Source: Wallemia ichthyophaga EXF-994 (Eukaryota; Fungi; Basidiomycota). From it: DNA of 32,000 nt. Position numbers and translations under genes: made by a program. Shown here piece after piece: positions 22,950-32,000 of the stretch (its first letter is position 1; each line of letters begins with the position of its first letter). The stretch is taken from assembly GCF_000400465.1 (NCBI RefSeq), contig NW_008806282.1:360001-392000 (forward strand). Reading direction: 5' to 3'. The notes below the pieces were generated by a model that saw only the letters and a program-made list of their open reading frames with translations, had not been told where the DNA came from and did not search any database.

Positions 22950-24954
22950 CTAGTTGGTCGTGAACTTGTACTCATCGTCAATGTTTAAGTTGCTAAGGTT
23001 CTTCTTCATTGTCTCCGGAGTGTTGAATGGGAAGAGCGCGTAGACACTGTCTGGGCTGAGCGTGTTTGGAAGGGTGTTAGCAAGGAGCGTAACAAGCATA
23101 CCACCGAAAGCCTTGTTTTCGTTGTCTGGTTGGATGTAGTTGAAACCCCATGTGGTGAGTGCCTTAGGCGTGCAGTCGTTGGTGAGGAATCTGTCACTAC
23201 GAACCAATGAAACGGCATCTGAAAGAATAGCTCTTGAGACGGTGAATCCTGGACAGAGACCGCTGCCTTCAATTGGTGGCTTTTGCTCCTCTGCAAGTAA
23301 ACCTGGGTATAATTCGAGGTTGTCAATGTGACCATACAACTCTCTGGCTGCTTGGGCAACCTCTTTGTCAGAGTTCCACTCTTCAAATGACTTGAACGTG
23401 GTTAATGACATGGCCTTTCTGAACTCGTTCATGGTACACAAGCCCCAAACATCTCTGGCTTGCTTCATACCCATCATATCAACAACCTTCAATACGGTTG
23501 GTGTACCTCTTGCTCTGAATGATGCAGCTGGTTCATCAATGGCCTGCTTCAACACACCAACAAGGTCTGTATTCTTGAATGCACCATCTGAATTACGGTG
23601 CAATCCTGGAATTTCGCGCTTGGCTGGGTCGTCTCCAGCCATCTTCGCCAAATTGTATGCCTTCTCGTGGAAGTCCTTTGGAGTGATCTTGTCAAAGTCA
23701 CAGTCTGGACCAAAGATCTTCTTGAAGAAGCCTTCAGTCCACTTGGTGTCAGACTTTGACAAAACTGAGTGCCATCTGTAGAGAACGTTGAATTCAACAG
23801 ATACAGCACCACCGTTACCAGCTTCCAATGGAGCTTGACCCATCTGGTGTACTTCAGCCCGTGGGTCGAGAACCCATGTTGACTTTGAGCGAGTAAGGCC
23901 TAAGATAGCTCTCAAGTAGTCGTGAAGGACAACATTTGCGAAGAAGGCACAGTTGACGAGCTTAGCGGTGTGGAAAAGATCTTGGTCTTGCTTCTTCTTT
24001 TGCTCGTCGTCAAGTTGGTTCCATGGCTTGTACCATCCTCTCTCGTTCTCTCTGAACAAGTTGTCGACAATGTAGTTGTGGTTTCTCGAAATAAGAATGA
24101 GGAGAGTGGTAATGGCTGGTGGCATCATGAACAATCTTGACTCGGAGATTGTGTCTGGCTTGAGTTTACCATTGTCGAATGAACGAACGGAGTGTTCCTC
24201 TTGGTCGTTGTTACCATAGACAATAGCCAAGTCGATGTATGAAGAGGTACCGTTGATGGCAGAGTTACGCGTGTCAGTTCTGAAGATGGTGTGGATAACA
24301 CAGGTAGCAAAGTTGAAGAAAAGGGCTGAAAGACCAGTTGGGTGTTCCAAGAAGTCACCTTCTCTTCTACGCAGGAGCTTGTCAAAGACATCTTCTGGGG
24401 ATGGAAGTGGTTGGGAGTAGACGTGCTTCGATGAGACATTACGCGCGTAAGCTGTAAGACGGAATTAGTTAAGCGTGTCTTACTATGACATCATATAAAC
24501 TCACGGGTGCCGGCTCTGCCCAATGAAGGCATGAATGGGTTGTTGAGCGCGCCGTCTGCGTGTCTCACACGTAAAGAACCTTGTACAACTTCGTTGCCGT
24601 TGAAAGGCTGATCACCGACGTAACAGAGTGGTGGGTGAGGAAGGTCTTGCCAGAGCATTTTAATGAATTTACCAGTGAGTTGGTCATTCTCTGGGGTTGA
24701 CTGACGTGTGTGAGTGTGTTGAGCTTGGTGAGACAATATCAACCTACAGGAATAGTTGAAAGTACACCGACCATTCTTTCAAGCAAGAACTCTCTGTCAT
24801 TCTGTGAACCGCCATTGGCAGCAGTCTTAAAGAGGTCATGCATCATGCCAATATCTTGGATAACCTTTCCACTCTTGATTTGAGAAGCAATGTTCCCAAG
24901 CAAGTTCCAGATTGGCCTAAAGACTGATTGGTTTGTTTTGTCGTTTGGTGCCAT
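22950..24954 (-). CDS. Heme fatty-acid dioxygenase of the Ppo/linoleate diol synthase family, peroxidase-cyclooxygenase domain only (about 634 aa)
   Basis: Exons 24954-24748, 24700-24505 and 24451-22950. Motifs LWQDLPHPP, R.ADG..NN..P.LG.AGTPYAR, distal His (VIHTIFRTD), SYIDLAIVYG, VEFNVLYRWH (catalytic Tyr and proximal His), ELYPGL and SDAVSLVRSDRF. Confidence 0.9.
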
Positions 24955-25379
24955 TTTTCGTTGTGGTGGAAGTTTAAGTTCAAGGAAGAGACAATTGCAC
25001 CACACAAATGTACGTCAGATTTATGACATTCCAACCTTATTCATATTTAGGTGGAGGTGAAGTTTTTATTAAAAAACGCTCTAAATGAACGAGCGTGGCT
25101 GTTTCGCATATAGATTTCACATTGAACCTGCGGCAGCTGTAAAATCTGATATGCGTGCCTTAATAAAACCCTGACGTTCATGACGCAGATACAAAGGCTG
25201 CGATGGAAATGAAGCCACGTGAACATAGCCTATATACTTTAAAGTCGTAGGAATTTTATGCAAGACAAGGCTGTTTCACTATCTGCCCGACGCACGGCCA
25301 CTCCGCATTTCAGTCGGCCAATCAGCTTTCGATCATTAATTTAAGCGCGTTTGAATATTTTACCACTCGTGCTAAGATA
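24955..25379. promoter_or_regulatory. Probable shared bidirectional promoter of the dioxygenase and heme-thiolate peroxidase
   Basis: 425 nt between two divergent ATGs, much longer than the other three divergent ATG-ATG gaps in the window (10, 18 and 82 nt). Contains TGACGT-type elements at 25012-25017 (minus) and 25172-25177 (plus). Confidence 0.5.
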
Positions 25380-26585
25380 ATGTCATCTGCAGAAACGCAG
25401 CCCAAGCCACAAGCATCTGCGTGCGAGGACTACCAAGTGAACAGGTTCTTAGGACTCTGGAACAGGATCAAAGGTGTTGTAACGTTACCACCGAAATTGC
25501 TGCCATTCCTCATCCTTCACACCCTTGATCCGATTCTATTCCTCCTCAATATCCTAACTATCCCCTTCCCAAGAGCTAAGCCTGAATCTCAACACAAATG
25601 GACGCTTGCCGATAGAATGTTGGCCAAGGCATGTCAATGGAGTGGTTGGGGTAAGATCACTGAATCTGACAAGAAGATGATCCTCTCTGCCCTCAATAAC
25701 TACGCTGCACCCGGCGAAGAAGACTCACGTTCCCCATGTCCTGGTCTCAACGCTATGGCCAATCACGGTGAGTGTAATATATGTCAGTTTACCAACGCAC
25801 TGACACACACAGGATTCATTCCACGCCACGGCAAGCACGTATCTCTCTCCGTTATCTGCGTTGCCATCAAGAAGACTTATGATTTCGCTCCGACGTTTGC
25901 ATACCAACTGACGTCAGCTGCCGGCTTCATTTCCAAATCTTCCGGCGACGGCAAGACATGGTTAGATTTGAAAGACATCGAAGCGCCAAATGTGATTGAG
26001 CACGATGCATCTTTGTTGCGTGAGTGGAGGTAGTTCTCAATTTTTCCGCTAACTAGTGTACAGGCCATGACCGCATGTTCCAGCCAAATCAAGGTGCACC
26101 AGCTGTAGACCTCTGCGAGCGCACACTCCAGTTTGCGCACCCACCAAAGCAGCCAGGTGCACCAGGCAAGAAGGGCAAGTCGTGTCTCAACACGGAATCC
26201 ATGTCCAAGGCTCTCTACGAACGTAGGCTCATTTGCTCATCCGATCAAGATCCAAACCGCGAGAACAAAGTCAGAAACGGCCAGTACTTCTTGCCAGGTA
26301 AGCTCAAGATATTCGGCGCCGGTAACTCGGCTATCCCACTCATTCTCTGGGATGGTAGACAAGATTACATCAGACCTTTCTTCGTCGAAGAGCGCTTGGC
26401 TTACAGAGAGGGATGGCACCCATACACCCGTGAAGATCCTGCTGGATTCTTCGGTCTCTCGTTCATGTACTTTATGTGAGTTAGGTACTTGCGAATACAC
26501 GCAGCTAATGATGCAACGCAGGCTTGTATTCGCAACCATCGAGCATGGCGTTGGTAACATCTTCACCAAGAAGAAAAAAGATTAA
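25380..26585 (+). CDS. Heme-thiolate peroxidase (chloroperoxidase / short unspecific peroxygenase family), about 356 aa
   Basis: Exons 25380-25767, 25813-26019, 26064-26475 and 26522-26585 (introns 45, 44 and 46 nt). Proximal motif RSPCPGLNAMANHGFIPR, IEHDASLLR.D, and FF.EERL..EGW.P. Confidence 0.9.
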
Positions 26586-27865: not shown

Positions 27866-28586
27866 TTAGACTGATTCTTTGGGTTTGTTAGTGGATAAAG
27901 CCATCAAGACATTAAAAACTCACGCTTAATGAGGTTGTTAAGCTTGTTTACCTTGCTAGCAACAGACAAGTCAACAGTCTTCTCACCAAACTCAACGACG
28001 AGCCCGCCAAGGAGCGCTGGGTTCACTTTGCTGACAAACTTAATCTTCTTTCCTTCTGCAGCGATTGATGAGTTTTTAAGTGTAGCTTCAAGACGTGATT
28101 GGAGCTTGGAATCGAGCTCTTGAGCTGACTCAACAACAACCTCTACATCGCCATTGTGGGCGCTGATGAGCTTCTCAAACTCTTCAACGACCTTTGAGGT
28201 TGAAGCGAGTCTACCATTCTCTGAGAGAGTAGACAGGAGGTTCTTGGTGATTTCAGACTTGGCACCAGAGAACTTGAGAGCCTCTTCAATGCCTTGTACA
28301 CGTGCATCGTTGGAGAGTGTTGGGTTGGTAATGAGGTCCAACAACTTGTCGTTCTTTGGAATCGAAGCTTTCAATCCGCTCAATTCTGTGGCAACTTGAG
28401 TGAGCGACTTTGGTGACTCCTTCAATGCCGCTGTGTACGCTGCAGTTGCGTACTTTCCTGGAAGCGAGTAGAGGGTAATTGGTGGCTAAATTTTATTAGA
28501 AAAGCCACAAAACGTTACCAAATACTCACGGAAACCTTTGCTTGAGTTGCGTAGCCTCTAACGCTGTTGAAAGATCTATTCATCAT
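27866..28586 (-). CDS. ATP5: Mitochondrial ATP synthase OSCP subunit
   Basis: Presequence MMNRSFNSVRGYA; intron 28529-28486; PPITLYSLPGKYATA, NLLSTLSENGRL, VNPALLGGLVVEFGEKTVDLSV; final intron ending at 27877, last exon QSV*. Confidence 0.95.
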
Positions 28587-29037
28587 GGTGGTTATGGTGC
28601 AGAGACGAGATATCCACAAAGAATCTTAATGGACTTGTGATCCACTCTATCACACTCACAAACCACTCACAAACTCTTTCATCCTACTTTAATCTTTTTT
28701 ACGACTCTTCTGTGTCGCTTCTGCGATGAGCTCCGAGATTGATCCATAGGGCAATCCAACTTGGAATTGACAAGTTTGATTCTTTAGTCTTTAATTTCTT
28801 CATCTTTGAAATATGTTCATCCTTTTCAAGCTGATTTTTATTTCCTGGCCACCGTCTCAACGCTATAGCTAAACATACTTGTATAATACAATGCAATAAA
28901 TTATTATTTAATAGGAACTTAAGAAACTTATTTACATCTTGACAGCAGAGATCAGCTAGTTACCGATCAAGCTTTGCTTTTCACCATTCAATCTTCTGAC
29001 TCATTTTTATACATTAATCTTTATTGTAATCATTAAT

Positions 29038-29408
29038 CTAGCATTCATCGCTGTCGTTGTATCCGCAATTCGTTGCTGCTACTTTACCTCCTTGCTTGCG
29101 ACACCATGCAGACAGACCAGCGATATCTCTGTCATTTCTTTCGAATCCGCGGTATGTCAGACGACAATAGTCACAGTTACAGCCGAACATATTACAACTG
29201 TGGCAGCTATGCCATGCGCAGGAGTTGTTTGGTACACCGCTTTGAATTCCTAGGTAATGTTAGCAAAATGAATGTCATTGAAAGACTTGTTCTTACCTGA
29301 AATGAGCTTGCCATTTGCATCTTTGCATCGATAGTCGCATCTGCCTTTGTTTTCAGCCTGGACAGCGAGAAAGATTGATGAAATGACGATAAGCTTCGAA
29401 AATATCAT
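29038..29408 (-). CDS. Small secreted cysteine-rich protein, array copy A (107 aa, 11 Cys)
   Basis: Exons 29408-29297 and 29249-29038, 47-nt phase-1 intron (gtaaga..gctaac..ctag). MIFSKLIVISSIFLAVQA/ENKGRCDYRCKDANGKLISGIQSGVPNNSCAWHSCHSCNMFGCNCDYCRLTYRGFERNDRDIAGLSAWCRKQGGKVAATNCGYNDSDEC*. Signal peptide judged by eye. Confidence 0.88.
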
Positions 29409-29836
29409 CTTGATTGTGCTTAAATAAGCCTCAATTTCAGTTCCTTGTATTTATGTCGTTGCCTCGGCACAGGTCATCACATGTGAATGAGAAATGAATG
29501 GAGTTTCAGAACATCAAACTGAGACATAAAGGCGCCAAAAGTTCGCAGTAGCGAGCCTGAAAAACATTCTTTTCTAAGAAAAAAAATATTTGTTGACCAT
29601 TAATTTCGGCCATCGATGTTAACTTCTTTCGCAGTCAAAATTTATAACTTTCCAACCAAGCCAAAGTTACCGATGACCAGCATATTCCAAGTCGTTTGAA
29701 TGCTTTCGATTGTAATTTGGTGAAGGAAAAATGTCTTCAGACCATATCTTAACGTTTTGTGTGGCGAGAATAATAGATTCAAATTTGCACATGAATGTCA
29801 TCGTTTGATTGTCATAAAGAGTTTTACAGTTATCCA

Positions 29837-30189
29837 GAATTCTTTACTAAAACAACTATCGCAGTATGTTTCTTTTATTTCACCTTCTCGTCTGTAGCAC
29901 CAGCTATCAATTTTACTAACGGGCTTATCGCTAGGGTAATTGAAAGTCGGCAATCGTCGCAGTTATTACCTAATATATTACAAATGTGGCAGCTATTCCA
30001 CTAACACCTATCGTCGTATATGGCGCTTTGAATGCCTATATATACTTTCAGTATGTTGAAGGTTTTCAAATTGTCCACTATTACCTGTAATGTGGGGGCC
30101 ATTTGAACCCATTCACCAATATTTGCACCTCTCTGCATAATAATTATGGAGATGTACAATGCAGATTTTGCGATGGTATGTTTCGTACC
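29837..30189 (-). pseudogene. Decayed copy of the small secreted Cys-rich gene family
   Basis: Same phase-1 intron position (30084-30036). The ATG is missing after the conserved ACTCGATCAAG context. TGA replaces Cys2 (30115-30113), there is an in-frame TAG (30003-30001) and a frameshift near 29943, and the terminal Cys is lost. Residual motifs: GIQSA..C*WNSCHICNILGNNCDDCRL and SWCYRREG..TYC. Confidence 0.85.
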
Positions 30190-30614
30190 CTTGATCGAGT
30201 ACTTCGTAATGCTCAGTCACCATCCTTCCTGGTGTCTCTGAATACTTTACAGTTTATATCACTGAAGCAGCATTAACAGTGAGAGTGGTTAAGGCAATGG
30301 CAATTAGTTTTGAAAAGATTTTGTTTAAAGATCTACAAGGAAAAACTATCATTTATAGCTCTGACACCTGTCATTGCGTCGATACGTCGTCACGGTAGAC
30401 AAAGCTGAGACAGGTTGTATAATTCAGGTTGTAGCATTAATGCGCTCGAAAAGCACTATTTCTACGGCATTTATTCACTTTCAGCAAACGAGGTCAAATT
30501 CTGACAGCAGAGATCATTTAGTTACCAATCAAGCTATCTTCTTATTCCTGAGACGAATACCTATTCATCGCTTTTGTTTGTTTTTACACATTACTCCTCA
30601 TTAAGACTATTCCT

Positions 30615-31002
30615 CTAGCAGTATTGGTTATCTATCCTGGTAGAGCAATTTTCAATTTCCCATTCCCCTCCTTGATGGTTGCACCACTCTTTAAAACCTT
30701 CAATATCTCTTTGGTTTCTGTTAGGCCCGCTTTCTGTCAGACGGCAGAAGTCACAGTTGTAGCCGAATATGTTGCAACTGTGACAAGCATGCGAGGAGCA
30801 GTAGCTGTCTGGTATACCGTTTTGAACTCCTAGATAATTGTAAGAAGATCAAAACTTCGAAGGACTGTTTCTTACCTGTGATTCGCGTTTCAAATTTATC
30901 ACGGCTATAGCACATGAAGGAGCATTGTGTATTTCTATGACGATTGCGAGCGTTTACTGCGAGAAACACTGAGAAAATAGCGACAAGCTTCGAAAACAAC
31001 AT
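30615..31002 (-). CDS. Small secreted cysteine-rich protein, array copy B (113 aa, 10 Cys)
   Basis: Exons 31002-30876 and 30829-30615, 46-nt phase-1 intron. MLFSKLVAIFSVFLAVNA/RNRHRNTQCSFMCYSRDKFETRITGVQNGIPDSYCSSHACHSCNIFGYNCDFCRLTESGPNRNQRDIEGFKEWCNHQGGEWEIENCSTRIDNQYC*. TATAAA at 31043-31038. Confidence 0.9.
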
Positions 31003-31701
31003 CTTGATCGAGTGAAAAAAGGCCATATTCACAACTATTTATACTTCTGTCATACGTCATTACCTCGGCACAGGCTCTCTCACAAGTGTATGACAATTGA
31101 ATGAACTTACGAAATGTCAGACTGAAACAGGAAAATCGCAATAGTTCTGCAGTACCGAGCCTAAGTTTTTGCCCTCAACTTTCGGTAAACGATGTCAAGA
31201 TCTTTGACAGCATATTAATAATTTGCCAACAAAGCTAAATTCACCGATGATTCGCTTATTTCAGGTTGTTCGAATGCTTTTGGCTGTGATGTTTCTAGAC
31301 CATGTCTTAACTTTTTGCGTGGCTAACATATTATATGCAAAGTCCCAGGTATATGTTCTGATCTCATTGTCATAGTCATTGTATAATACGTCATTGATGA
31401 AGCTTTAAATTGAGTTAAAGTTTCTGTGATTAAGTCCGATAGAATTATGGACACTATACTAAAAATGCAGCTCGTCATTACGGTAACTAGAGCTGAATCG
31501 TGTTGTACGATGTTGAAGCAAGAGCTTCAGGTGCAGCATTCACTATAAATACTTTCGAAATACACTATCTACGCTACAATCAATCCACTTTTGGCCAACG
31601 AGGTCAAATGTTTGATATTTAAGATTAATGATTTAGTTCGTATTTATGGACAAATTTATTTACTCCTTGTTCTATTATTCTCCAATTGTAGCATCCTTTA
31701 T

Positions 31702-32000
31702 TTAACATTCTCTGCTGTCATTGTATCCGCAATTGTGTTCTGCTATTCTGCCTCCTTTATTTTGACACCAATTAGTCACACGTGTAATATCTATTGAATT
31801 CTTATTTCCGTTAGAAGTGTCGCTCCCGGGTGCATAGTCCTCGAAGCGGCAGTACGTGCAGGCTGATGCGACAAAGTTACAACCGTGGCAGCTATACCAT
31901 GCGCAACTATCTTCCGGAACAGGACTTTGAATTCCTGGCTCTTATTATCAGAAAATATTAGTTTATATTTCTCATCATTACCCTTTATAACTTTGCCAGT
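31702..32000 (-). CDS. Small secreted cysteine-rich protein, array copy C (5' end outside the window)
   Basis: Partial exon 1 ..TGKVIKG (32000-31982), intron 31981-31935, exon 2 31934-31702 open to TAA: IQSPVPEDSCAWYSCHGCNFVASACTYCRFEDYAPGSDTSNGNKNSIDITRVTNWCQNKGGRIAEHNCGYNDSREC*. Confidence 0.85.

What the first reader, a model, noticed from the sequence alone, without database searches (positions are those of the whole stretch)
22950..26585. Candidate split oxylipin pathway: P450-less dioxygenase paired head-to-head with a heme-thiolate peroxidase
Seen: the two heme enzymes are divergent across 425 nt and sit among unrelated housekeeping genes. Established: in Ppo fusions a Cys-ligated heme (P450) domain converts the dioxygenase's hydroperoxide to diols, epoxyalcohols or allene oxides. 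Heme-thiolate peroxidases are also Cys-ligated and can use organic hydroperoxides. Inference: the neighbouring peroxidase replaces the lost P450 domain in trans, a non-homologous displacement giving a co-regulated two-gene oxylipin system. I do not know of this pairing having been described, but could not search.
Basis: inference. Interest (0 to 1): 0.8.

Follow-up and report, generated by a model that had tools for sequence, protein, structure and literature searches.

The report
Fungal dioxygenase paired with heme-thiolate peroxidase
In the salt-loving fungus Wallemia, a fatty-acid dioxygenase that has lost its usual P450 half sits head-to-head with an unusual intracellular heme-thiolate peroxidase, and the same pairing recurs in distant fungi, so the two probably work together to make lipid signals, though no experiment has tested this.

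Summary
The window is Wallemia ichthyophaga. A 634-aa Ppo-type dioxygenase (DOX; minus strand, 24954-22950) and a 356-aa heme-thiolate peroxidase (HTP; plus strand, 25380-26585) diverge across 425 nt among housekeeping genes. The DOX keeps its catalytic His/Tyr/His and ends at the DOX/P450 linker.

New findings:
- The HTP is not a classical peroxygenase. It lacks a signal peptide, has hydrophobic N- and C-terminal helices, and has Asn286 where UPOs have the acid-base Glu.
- The same head-to-head pairing, with the same Asn-type HTP subfamily, occurs in W. mellicola (HTP unannotated), Ceratobasidium/Rhizoctonia, Dacryopinax and one ascomycete metagenome contig. It is absent from most other Ppo loci sampled.
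- Outside Wallemia the paired Ppos are full length, and one keeps its P450 cysteine. The partnership therefore predates the domain loss rather than following it.

Best reading: a co-regulated two-gene oxylipin module in which the HTP consumes the DOX's hydroperoxide. This rests on gene context alone, confidence about 0.5. The full-text searches I ran found no description of the pairing.

The parts
22950..24954 (-). Stand-alone Ppo/linoleate-diol-synthase-type fatty-acid dioxygenase gene (634 aa; exons 24954-24748, 24700-24505, 24451-22950). It has no P450 domain.
   Evidence: Spliced model is 100% identical to P0001. Pfam An_peroxidase only, E 4e-37. Nearest solved structures are COX-2/COX-1. 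All non-Wallemia relatives are about 1000-1100 aa, many with PF00067. The protein ends at the DOX/P450 linker.
24291..24293 (-). Codon of DOX His188, the distal heme histidine (motif VIHTIF)
   Evidence: Invariant column in alignment A3; coordinates worked out by hand from the sequence and the exon model.
23769..23780 (-). Codons of the DOX Y359-R-W-H362 motif (catalytic tyrosine and proximal heme histidine)
   Evidence: Y359, W361 and H362 are invariant in A3. The motif aligns with the COX-2 'LYHWH'. YRWH is the 8-/10-DOX form and YRFH the 9-DOX form (PMC8097960).
24955..25379 (.). 425-nt intergenic region between the two start codons; presumed bidirectional promoter
   Evidence: Coordinates. 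The equivalent gap in W. mellicola is 413 nt. Conserved blocks are seen across three Wallemia sequences.
25128..25169 (.). Conserved non-coding block 1 (minus-strand reading GTTTTATTAAGGCACGCATATCAGATTTTACAGCTGCCGCAG)
   Evidence: Three-way alignment A2. The longest run of invariant columns lies inside an intergenic region averaging 66% column identity.
25026..25058 (.). Conserved non-coding block 2 (ACCTCCAC ... AAGGTTGGAATGT)
   Evidence: Alignment A2. A role in regulation is inferred only.
25380..26585 (+). Intracellular, membrane-anchored, Asn-type heme-thiolate peroxidase gene (356 aa; exons 25380-25767, 25813-26019, 26064-26475, 26522-26585)
   Evidence: Spliced model matches P0121 over its full length at a reported 100%, with one residue difference from the cluster representative (K149 vs N). 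Pfam Peroxidase_2, E 2e-36. Best PDB matches are short UPOs. AlphaFold model pLDDT 80.5 with TM-score 0.74-0.82 (target-normalised) to CviUPO, DcaUPO, HspUPO and MroUPO. Hydrophobic segments at aa 40-63 and 324-343.
25737..25739 (+). Codon of HTP Cys120 (PCP motif SPCPGLNAMANHG), the proximal heme thiolate ligand
   Evidence: Invariant in A1 and A4. Aligns to the PCP cysteine of MroUPO/MweUPO.
26324..26326 (+). Codon of HTP Asn286, occupying the position of the distal acid-base glutamate of UPOs and CPO
   Evidence: In the profile-to-PDB alignment the family consensus 'fgsgNsa' sits over 'tsyGEti' (CviUPO), 'fsiGEsv' (9tm7) and 'irssEsa' (MweUPO/MroUPO type). The per-sequence column is listed. 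The residue lies in predicted helix 277-294.

Best explanation
This is a two-gene oxylipin module driven from a shared 425-nt divergent promoter.

Step 1 (from homology): the 634-aa DOX is a heme dioxygenase of the Ppo/linoleate-diol-synthase clade. It has distal His188, radical-forming Tyr359 and proximal His362. It should abstract a hydrogen from oleic or linoleic acid and insert O2 to give an 8- or 10-hydroperoxide. Because it has no P450 domain, it must release that hydroperoxide.

Step 2 (inferred from gene context and active-site make-up): the neighbouring HTP takes that fatty-acid hydroperoxide as its peroxide substrate. The HTP is an intracellular, membrane-anchored, Cys120-ligated heme protein with Asn286 in place of the acid-base Glu that UPOs need to activate H2O2. 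It would either rearrange or cleave the hydroperoxide (diol, epoxy alcohol, or C8 + C10 fragments), or use it as oxidant and reduce it to the hydroxy acid.

History (from comparison): the Ppo-HTP partnership is older than Wallemia, or has arisen repeatedly. Having such a partner made the already often-defunct P450-like domain of basidiomycete Ppos dispensable, and Wallemia deleted it cleanly at the linker.
For: - Domain identities and intact catalytic residues of both proteins.
- Both genes are under purifying selection between W. ichthyophaga and W. mellicola: DOX dN 0.14 against dS about 1.2; HTP pN 0.12 against pS 0.76.
- The W. mellicola HTP ortholog is intact although unannotated.
- Conserved blocks in the shared intergenic region.
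- Head-to-head Ppo-HTP pairs, with 0.4-1.0 kb between the genes, also occur in four other places. These are Ceratobasidium AG-I (L006), Rhizoctonia solani AG-1 IA (L010), Dacryopinax primogenitus (L015, with both genes tandemly duplicated) and a Helotiales-like ascomycete contig (L070).
- Every paired HTP whose distal position could be read is of the Asn type (Wallemia, Ceratobasidium, Dacryopinax). All show the family's N-terminal hydrophobic segment, and the ascomycete HTP is about 84% identical to Asn-type members.
- No other HTP gene was found anywhere in about 375 kb of flanks of 80 metagenomic Ppo loci. Adjacency is therefore not a density effect.
- Three of the four paired Ppos whose status is known have no P450 thiolate in cis: Wallemia has no domain, Ceratobasidium AG-I reads GLHKTFT, and Dacryopinax reads EKTFD.
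- Precedent for Asn as a distal residue in hydroperoxide-converting heme-thiolate enzymes (PGIS, plant AOS, possibly LDS) comes from PMC13049297.
- Precedent for a stand-alone COX-like DOX working with a neighbouring non-P450 heme hydroperoxide lyase comes from Nostoc (cited in PMC9579011).
Against: - There are no biochemical, expression or genetic data for any of these pairs.
- The pairing is sporadic. It is absent at Ppo loci of Rhodosporidiobolus, Botryobasidium, Ceratobasidium AG-Ba, a chytrid and 25 of 26 non-redundant metagenome loci with at least 2 kb of upstream sequence. It is also absent at the Asn-type HTP loci of Armillaria, Gelatoporia and A. niger.
- Within Wallemia the whole block of about 10 genes is collinear, so conservation there says little.
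- R. solani, and probably the ascomycete, pair the HTP with a Ppo whose P450 looks functional, so the HTP is not simply a P450 substitute.
- Many unpaired basidiomycete Ppos also lack the cysteine, so loss of the ligand does not track with pairing.
- The trees do not show whether the pairs share ancestry.
- Whether an Asn-type HTP binds heme or turns over any peroxide is unknown. PMC9138132 raises exactly this doubt.
Confidence: 0.5

Rival explanations
1. The two genes are neighbours without any biochemical coupling. They share a divergent promoter, or merely a syntenic block, but act in separate processes. For example, the HTP could be a general intracellular peroxide or xenobiotic oxidoreductase and the DOX a self-sufficient hydroperoxide or hydroxy-fatty-acid producer.
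For: - Most Ppo loci and most Asn-type HTP loci sampled are unpaired.
- Wallemia synteny is conserved for all the neighbouring genes as well.
- In at least seven species the best-hit Ppo and best-hit HTP lie on contigs of different lengths.
- PpoC-type and CcDOX1-type enzymes work as plain hydroperoxide-forming DOXs (PMC9579011).
Against: - The same family pair, in the same head-to-head arrangement, recurs in four or five widely separated lineages.
- No HTP appears anywhere else in about 375 kb of Ppo flanks.
- My rough expectation for chance adjacency is a few per thousand loci.
Confidence: 0.3
2. Strict version of the reader's idea. After Wallemia lost the P450 domain, a pre-existing unrelated HTP was recruited next to the DOX as a non-homologous replacement performing the same isomerase reaction.
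For: - Wallemia combines complete loss of the domain with the pairing.
- Both catalysts are Cys-ligated hemes.
Against: - The pairing exists with full-length Ppos in Dacryopinax, Ceratobasidium and Rhizoctonia and with a PpoA-like gene in an ascomycete, so recruitment after the loss is not needed to explain it.
- R. solani keeps the P450 cysteine next to the HTP.
Confidence: 0.1
3. The truncated DOX or the Asn-type HTP is a decaying or catalytically dead relic, and the locus has no oxylipin function.
For: - The HTP lacks the canonical acid-base Glu.
- A motif-based survey found no UPO in Wallemiomycotina (PMC6417270).
- The DOX has lost about 40% of the ancestral protein.
Against: - Both reading frames are intact in W. 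ichthyophaga and W. mellicola, and the DOX frame also in the L003 contig, where the HTP is only partly covered.
- dN is much lower than dS for both genes.
- All heme-ligand and catalytic residues other than the Glu are retained.
- Asn at that position is conserved across the whole subfamily, not a one-off lesion.
- The truncation falls exactly at the domain boundary and keeps the last DOX helix (PMC13049297).
Confidence: 0.05

Closest known systems
Ppo / linoleate diol synthase DOX-CYP fusion enzymes (A. nidulans PpoA, A. fumigatus 5,8-LDS, G. graminis 7,8-LDS)
   Same: The DOX is a clear homolog, 43-48% identical over the whole DOX domain. It has the same distal His, YRWH catalytic Tyr/His and terminal helix.
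   Different: It has no C-terminal P450 domain at all. The protein ends where the 5,8-LDS DOX/CYP boundary lies (about R646/P647 according to PMC13049297).
DOXs with a dead P450 domain (Aspergillus 10R-DOX/PpoC; Coprinopsis CcDOX1/2; Cyclocybe DOXs)
   Same: These are hydroperoxide-releasing DOXs with no working heme-thiolate in cis, and a separate downstream enzyme is required (PMC9579011; PMC8097960). Wallemia's 'DYLRAIL' has Leu at the position that is Leu in 10R-DOX and Val in 8R-DOX (residue rule from PMC13049297, and my own knowledge).
   Different: Those enzymes keep the P450-like domain as a relic, whereas Wallemia has deleted it. Regiospecificity was not tested.
Fusarium oxysporum 9R-DOX (Sooman & Oliw 2015), a fungal Ppo-family DOX lacking a CYP domain
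   Same: A stand-alone fungal DOX of the same family (as cited in PMC8097960).
   Different: 9R-DOX enzymes carry YRFH, whereas Wallemia carries YRWH, the 8-/10-DOX form. No HTP partner has been reported for 9R-DOX, and I could not examine its locus.
Nostoc punctiforme 10S-DOX plus catalase-related 10S-hydroperoxide lyase (Brash et al. 2014, cited in PMC9579011)
   Same: A stand-alone COX-like DOX working in tandem with a separate, non-P450 heme enzyme that converts its hydroperoxide. This is the closest functional analog of what is proposed here.
   Different: The partner there is a catalase-related (Tyr-ligated) heme protein in a bacterium. Here it is a Cys-ligated HTP in fungi, and the activity is unproven.
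Short unspecific peroxygenases (MroUPO, CviUPO, DcaUPO, HspUPO) and chloroperoxidase
   Same: Same fold (target-normalised TM-score 0.74-0.82 to the short UPOs, 0.59 to chloroperoxidase), same PCP cysteine and same EHD motif.
   Different: The Wallemia HTP has no signal peptide. It has an N-terminal hydrophobic helix and a C-terminal hydrophobic helix, a roughly 40-aa insert before the PCP motif, and Asn286 instead of the acid-base Glu.
Intracellular basidiomycete HTPs such as AbHTP1 (Zamocky & Harichova 2022, PMC9138132)
   Same: A non-secreted, basal HTP clade with the Glu-to-Asn replacement. The paper itself asks whether such a protein can cleave peroxide.
   Different: No function, substrate or link to Ppo genes was proposed there.

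Membership tests
Ppo / linoleate diol synthase family (DOX-CYP fusion) | N-terminal animal-heme-peroxidase (COX-like) dioxygenase domain | tested here: met
   Pfam PF03098, E 4e-37; 43-48% identity to Ppo/LDS proteins over 91-100% of the query.
Ppo / linoleate diol synthase family (DOX-CYP fusion) | Distal His, catalytic Tyr and proximal His (YRWH motif) | tested here: met
   H188, Y359, W361 and H362 are invariant columns in A3.
Ppo / linoleate diol synthase family (DOX-CYP fusion) | C-terminal P450 (or P450-like) domain fused in cis | tested here: not met
   The protein is 634 aa against about 1000-1100 aa for relatives. There is no PF00067 hit. The alignment ends at the linker, and the next gene starts about 120 nt downstream.
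Ppo / linoleate diol synthase family (DOX-CYP fusion) | 8-, 9- or 10-dioxygenation of C18 fatty acids | not testable with these tools
   Needs an enzyme assay. The sequence gives only a hint (YRWH; Leu in 'DYLRAIL').
Unspecific peroxygenase / chloroperoxidase (heme-thiolate peroxidase, Pfam Peroxidase_2) | PCP motif with the proximal cysteine ligand | tested here: met
   SPC120PGLNAMANHG; C120 and P121 are invariant.
Unspecific peroxygenase / chloroperoxidase (heme-thiolate peroxidase, Pfam Peroxidase_2) | EHD/EGD cation- and propionate-binding motif | tested here: met
   E192-H193-D194 aligns with the EHD of MroUPO-type UPOs.
Unspecific peroxygenase / chloroperoxidase (heme-thiolate peroxidase, Pfam Peroxidase_2) | Distal acid-base glutamate (E196 in AaeUPO, E183 in CPO, E157 in MroUPO) needed for Compound I formation from H2O2 | tested here: not met
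   Asn286 occupies that column. The role of the Glu is taken from PMC6417270.
Unspecific peroxygenase / chloroperoxidase (heme-thiolate peroxidase, Pfam Peroxidase_2) | Secretion via an N-terminal signal peptide | tested here: inconclusive
   The N-terminus is polar (MSSAETQPKPQAS...). The first hydrophobic stretch is at aa 40-63, inside a long predicted helix 14-60. No dedicated signal-peptide or TM predictor was available.
Unspecific peroxygenase / chloroperoxidase (heme-thiolate peroxidase, Pfam Peroxidase_2) | UPO/CPO fold | tested here: met
   AlphaFold model pLDDT 80.5. Foldseek E 2e-11, with target-normalised TM-score up to 0.82 to short UPOs.
Two-gene DOX + hydroperoxide-converting heme enzyme modules (Nostoc 10S-DOX/10S-HPL type) | Adjacent genes for a stand-alone DOX and a second heme enzyme | tested here: met
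   The genes are 425 nt apart and divergent.
Two-gene DOX + hydroperoxide-converting heme enzyme modules (Nostoc 10S-DOX/10S-HPL type) | Linkage conserved beyond close relatives | tested here: met
   Pairs are found in Ceratobasidiaceae, Dacrymycetes and one ascomycete contig. The pairing is sporadic, however: most sampled loci are unpaired.
Two-gene DOX + hydroperoxide-converting heme enzyme modules (Nostoc 10S-DOX/10S-HPL type) | The second enzyme converts the DOX's hydroperoxide | not testable with these tools
   Needs biochemistry.
Two-gene DOX + hydroperoxide-converting heme enzyme modules (Nostoc 10S-DOX/10S-HPL type) | Co-expression of the two genes | not tested
   No expression data could be reached. 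Only conserved intergenic blocks were seen.
Stand-alone fungal 9R-DOX (F. oxysporum type) | YRFH motif typical of 9-DOX enzymes | tested here: not met
   Wallemia has YRWH. The motif rule is from PMC8097960.

The most novel reading that the evidence does not exclude
The Asn-type, membrane-anchored intracellular HTPs would be the missing fungal fatty-acid hydroperoxide-converting enzymes. They would form a third heme-thiolate solution, after CYP74 and the Ppo P450 domain, partnered with Ppo dioxygenases. In mushrooms they could include the 10(S)-HPODE-cleaving '1-octen-3-ol synthase', which was first characterised biochemically 40 years ago and was still unidentified in 2022-2023 (PMC9579011, PMC10282164). 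Wallemia, in which these searches found only one such DOX and one such HTP, would be the minimal natural version of that pathway.
Probability: 0.15. Interest if true: 0.85.

Novelty: new variant of a known kind. Interest (0 to 1): 0.66.

Why it matters
Fungal oxylipins control sporulation, development, quorum-like behaviour and interactions with hosts and insects. In basidiomycetes the Ppo dioxygenases have mostly lost their P450 activity, and the enzymes that process their hydroperoxides are unknown. That includes the enzyme that makes the 'mushroom alcohol' 1-octen-3-ol.

Separately, a whole clade of intracellular heme-thiolate peroxidases with Asn in place of the catalytic Glu has no known function. 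A recurrent, divergently transcribed Ppo-HTP gene pair links these two open problems. It gives a directly testable candidate: express two small genes and feed them 18:1 or 18:2, or 8- or 10-hydroperoxides.

If the link is real, it adds a new enzyme family to oxylipin biochemistry. It would also give peroxygenase engineers a natural scaffold tuned for organic hydroperoxides rather than H2O2. If it is not, the finding reduces to a truncated Ppo beside an orphan HTP in one genus.

Tried and rejected
- **Pseudogene or relic idea: rejected.** The reading frames are intact, dN is much lower than dS, and catalytic residues are conserved.
- **'Pair is Wallemia-specific': rejected.** Pairs were also found in L006, L010, L015 and L070.
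- **'Pairing tracks loss of the P450 cysteine': not supported.** The paired R. solani Ppo keeps Cys, and many unpaired basidiomycete Ppos lack it.
- **Ancestral versus convergent origin: unresolved.**
  - Neighbour-joining trees with bootstrap for the DOX domain and the HTPs do not resolve the deep nodes.
  - The Wallemia DOX falls outside the Agaricomycotina Ppos (100% bipartition). That fits the species tree and decides nothing.
  - A first tree attempt timed out.
  - No tool gives whole-genome access to a fungal assembly.
  - A protein search with a P450 domain would bury any Wallemia hit under hundreds of Ppos. I left the third homolog search unused rather than spend it on that.
- **Literature:**
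  - Full-text searches combining heme-thiolate peroxidase with linoleate diol synthase, chloroperoxidase with psi-producing oxygenase, and unspecific peroxygenase with fatty acid hydroperoxide found no paper describing the pairing.
  - A search for Wallemia with psi-producing oxygenase found no papers at all.
  - Wallemia with 1-octen-3-ol gave food, indoor-air and other environmental papers. I judged them from titles and abstracts only, and none offered direct production data.
  - Searches for Wallemia P450 counts were uninformative.
- **Contig-length shortcut:** Armillaria luteobubalina Ppo and HTP share a contig of the same length, but they are not within 10 kb of each other.
- **Structure prediction:** It was repeated without that sequence.


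Full report
**Observation**

The window comes from the halophilic basidiomycete Wallemia ichthyophaga. Splicing the minus-strand ORF fragments at canonical GT..AG introns gives a 1905-nt CDS encoding 634 aa (exons 24954-24748, 24700-24505, 24451-22950). This protein is identical over its full length to an NCBI W. ichthyophaga protein named 'Psi-producing oxygenase A' (P0001). On the plus strand a four-exon gene (25380-25767, 25813-26019, 26064-26475, 26522-26585) encodes 356 aa. It matches the W. ichthyophaga cluster representative P0121 over its full length at a reported 100%, with one residue different (K149 in the window, N in the representative). Pfam assigns An_peroxidase to the first protein and Peroxidase_2 to the second.

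The two start codons are 425 nt apart, and the finding's coordinates are the two stop codons. The neighbours are ordinary housekeeping genes: Nuf2, PI4-kinase, a protein kinase, Upf2, RhoGEF, Yju2 and Vps23 on one side, an SNF4-type CBS protein and ATP-synthase OSCP on the other.

**The dioxygenase**

- Its nearest relatives outside Wallemia are 43-48% identical Ppo/linoleate-diol-synthase proteins of about 1000-1100 aa, many with a recognisable P450 domain.
- In a 13-sequence alignment the Wallemia protein ends ('...EYKFTTN') where the others read '...YDFSRP' and continue into the P450 part. This matches the R646/P647 DOX/CYP boundary given for A. fumigatus 5,8-LDS, and it retains the last DOX helix that is said to be needed for expression (PMC13049297).
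- The distal His188, the Tyr359-Arg-Trp-His362 motif and some 90 other positions are invariant. COX-2 is the best solved-structure match and aligns its LYHWH over this motif.
- YRWH is the 8-/10-DOX form of the motif (PMC8097960). The Leu in 'DYLRAIL' sits where 10R-DOX has Leu and 8R-DOX has Val. That is a weak hint towards 10-oxygenation, which I did not test.
- The next gene starts about 120 nt after the stop codon, so no P450 remnant is hidden downstream.

**The peroxidase**

- It has the PCP motif (Cys120) and the EHD motif (E192-H193-D194).
- An AlphaFold model (pLDDT 80.5) superposes on short UPOs with target-normalised TM-scores of 0.74-0.82.
- It is nevertheless not a classical UPO. 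The N-terminus is polar, the first hydrophobic stretch is aa 40-63 inside a long helix, and a second hydrophobic helix closes the protein.
- A profile-to-PDB alignment places the family's conserved Asn (Asn286 in Wallemia) exactly over the acid-base Glu of CviUPO, MweUPO/MroUPO-type and another UPO.
- That Asn is conserved across the whole subfamily of roughly 270-330-aa anchored HTPs that are its closest relatives.
- Two published observations fit this picture:
  - A motif-based survey found no UPO in Wallemiomycotina (PMC6417270).
  - Intracellular AbHTP1-type HTPs carry a Glu-to-Asn change of uncertain catalytic meaning (PMC9138132).

**Within Wallemia**

- W. mellicola has the same short DOX (P0002, 83% identical, 634 aa) in the same gene order.
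- Its HTP is simply not annotated. I found it at L001 8381-9587 on the opposite strand (79-87% identical by tblastn), 413 nt from the DOX start, with an intact frame and one intron fewer.
- A third Wallemia contig (L003) also has the pair.
- Synonymous sites between the two species are near saturation while dN is about 0.13 for both genes. Both genes are therefore maintained by selection.
- The intergenic region keeps two strongly conserved blocks.
- Because about ten flanking genes are collinear as well, this conservation alone does not show a functional link.

**Beyond Wallemia**

This is the informative test, and I sampled it in two ways.

From public assemblies:
- Ceratobasidium sp. AG-I has a divergent HTP 974 nt upstream of a 983-aa Ppo (L006).
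- Rhizoctonia solani AG-1 IA has the same arrangement (L010).
- Dacryopinax primogenitus has two tandem 1034-aa Ppos facing two tandem HTPs, with 813 nt between the inner genes (L015).
- No HTP lies within 10 kb of the Ppos of Rhodosporidiobolus, Ceratobasidium AG-Ba (two tandem Ppos), Botryobasidium or the chytrid Rhizophlyctis (tblastn check).
- No Ppo lies next to the Asn-type HTPs of Armillaria, Gelatoporia or A. niger.

From a metagenome scan:
- The scan returned 80 Ppo loci, of which 26 non-redundant loci have at least 2 kb of upstream sequence.
- Exactly one of them, a Helotiales-like ascomycete contig (L070), carries an HTP. It lies immediately upstream and divergent, about 540 nt from a PpoA-like gene.
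- No HTP-family gene occurs anywhere else in about 375 kb of flanks.

Every paired HTP shows the family's N-terminal hydrophobic segment, and those whose distal position could be read carry Asn. These are Wallemia 'GAGNSA', Ceratobasidium 'SVANSA' and Dacryopinax 'SSSNCA'. The ascomycete HTP is 84% identical to Asn-type Acephala and Phialocephala proteins.

With one to a few such HTPs and one to four Ppos per genome of 5,000-15,000 genes, chance adjacency should occur at roughly a few loci per thousand. This is my own estimate; the Ppo copy number comes from PMC10282164. I found three independent non-Wallemia lineages among about 35 loci, all in the same orientation. That is strong evidence for a non-random association. 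It is equally clear that the association is sporadic rather than universal.

**Order of events**

- The paired Ppos outside Wallemia are full length.
- At the P450 heme-ligand position, Ceratobasidium AG-I reads GLHKTFT and Dacryopinax reads EKTFD (both without cysteine). R. solani reads GLHRCFS (cysteine kept).
- The ascomycete contig ends before that region.
- Unpaired basidiomycete Ppos also often lack the cysteine, as reported for CcDOX1/2 and the Cyclocybe DOXs.
- The HTP is therefore not a late stand-in recruited after Wallemia's deletion. More likely the partnership already existed, or arises readily, and Wallemia went furthest by discarding an already dispensable domain.
- Neighbour-joining trees do not resolve whether the pairs descend from one ancestral pair or arose convergently.

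**Mechanism**

Shown:
- Two intact heme enzymes, divergently arranged, conserved and recurrently linked.

Established for the families:
- Ppo DOX domains make 8-, 9- or 10-hydroperoxides.
- Without a working P450 domain these hydroperoxides are released. In Coprinopsis a separate, still unidentified enzyme cleaves 10(S)-HPODE (PMC9579011).
- In UPOs and CPO the distal Glu is the acid-base catalyst for Compound I formation from H2O2 (PMC6417270).
- Several hydroperoxide-rearranging heme-thiolate enzymes use a distal Asn (PMC13049297).

Inferred:
- The Asn-type HTP takes the fatty-acid hydroperoxide made next door. It then either isomerises or cleaves it, or uses it as an oxidant.
- Both proteins act at an intracellular membrane.
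- I put about 0.5 on coupling of some kind, and much less on any particular product.

**Comparison and novelty**

- A fungal Ppo-family DOX without a CYP domain is already known (F. oxysporum 9R-DOX), so the truncation by itself is not new.
- The closest functional analog of the proposed module is the Nostoc 10S-DOX with its neighbouring catalase-related 10S-hydroperoxide lyase.
- New here is the partner family (an intracellular Asn-type HTP), the recurrence of the pair across fungal classes, and the minimal Wallemia version.
- The full-text literature searches I ran found no description of a Ppo-HTP link.
- I classify it as a new variant of a known kind of system. It is interesting mainly because it offers a concrete candidate for two open questions: the function of Asn-type intracellular HTPs, and the identity of the enzymes downstream of basidiomycete Ppos.

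**Limits**

- There are no expression or biochemical data.
- The synteny sample is small (12 look-ups and one metagenome scan).
- I had no access to the rest of the Wallemia genome, so a stand-alone Ppo-type P450, CYP74-like or catalase-related enzyme elsewhere cannot be excluded.

Noticed in passing
L001 8381-9587 (W. mellicola CBS 633.66, GCA_000263375.1) and the same place in L002: The HTP ortholog is missing from both W. mellicola annotations, leaving a 1.7-kb 'empty' gap between the CBS gene and the DOX. The gene is intact, with exons 9587-9161, 9114-8496 and 8446-8381 on the minus strand. It lacks the second intron of the W. ichthyophaga gene.
   Followed up: yes
L015 1-11098 (Dacryopinax primogenitus): Both partners are tandemly duplicated: two 1034-aa Ppo genes on one strand face two HTP genes (P0178, P0169) on the other. 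The whole module seems to have expanded together.
   Followed up: partly
P0008 (L006) versus P0065 (L010): These are orthologous paired Ppos of two Ceratobasidiaceae. They differ at the P450 heme-ligand position: GLHKTFT (Cys replaced by Thr) in Ceratobasidium AG-I, and GLHRCFS (Cys kept) in R. solani AG-1 IA. This may be a recent inactivation of the P450 domain next to an HTP.
   Followed up: partly
window 25026-25058: Conserved intergenic block 2 contains TTGGAATGT. GGAATG is the complement of CATTCC, which I recall as the TEA/ATTS (AbaA/Tec1-type) binding site. This might tie the pair to developmental regulation, but it rests on memory and was not tested.
   Followed up: no
window 26522-26585 (HTP C-terminus): After the C-terminal hydrophobic helix the protein ends in ...NIFTKKKKD. 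This resembles a di-lysine (KKXX) ER-retrieval signal. W. mellicola ends in ...PRDKKN, which is a poorer match. The resemblance comes from general knowledge and was not tested.
   Followed up: no
window 28500-32000: Synteny with W. mellicola stops after the OSCP gene. The multicopper oxidase and Exo84 genes found there in W. mellicola are absent from the window. Instead there is an AT-rich stretch (GC 0.37-0.40) holding four diverged tandem units spaced about 790-1100 nt apart. Some of the small ORFs there begin with hydrophobic, signal-peptide-like N-termini (for example 29250-29408 and 30751-31032, minus strand) and others are cysteine-rich (for example 29038-29190, minus strand). This may be a small family of secreted proteins.
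   Followed up: partly
L013 17903-19634 (Gelatoporia subvermispora): A fatty-acid desaturase gene lies about 7 kb from an unpaired Asn-type HTP. This is probably coincidence, but it is another lipid-metabolism neighbour.
   Followed up: no
P0123/P0126 (Aspergillus section Nigri HTPs): These are the best-scoring non-Wallemia relatives of the Wallemia HTP. They carry Thr rather than Asn at the distal position ('GSGTSA') and are not next to a Ppo (L014).
   Followed up: partly
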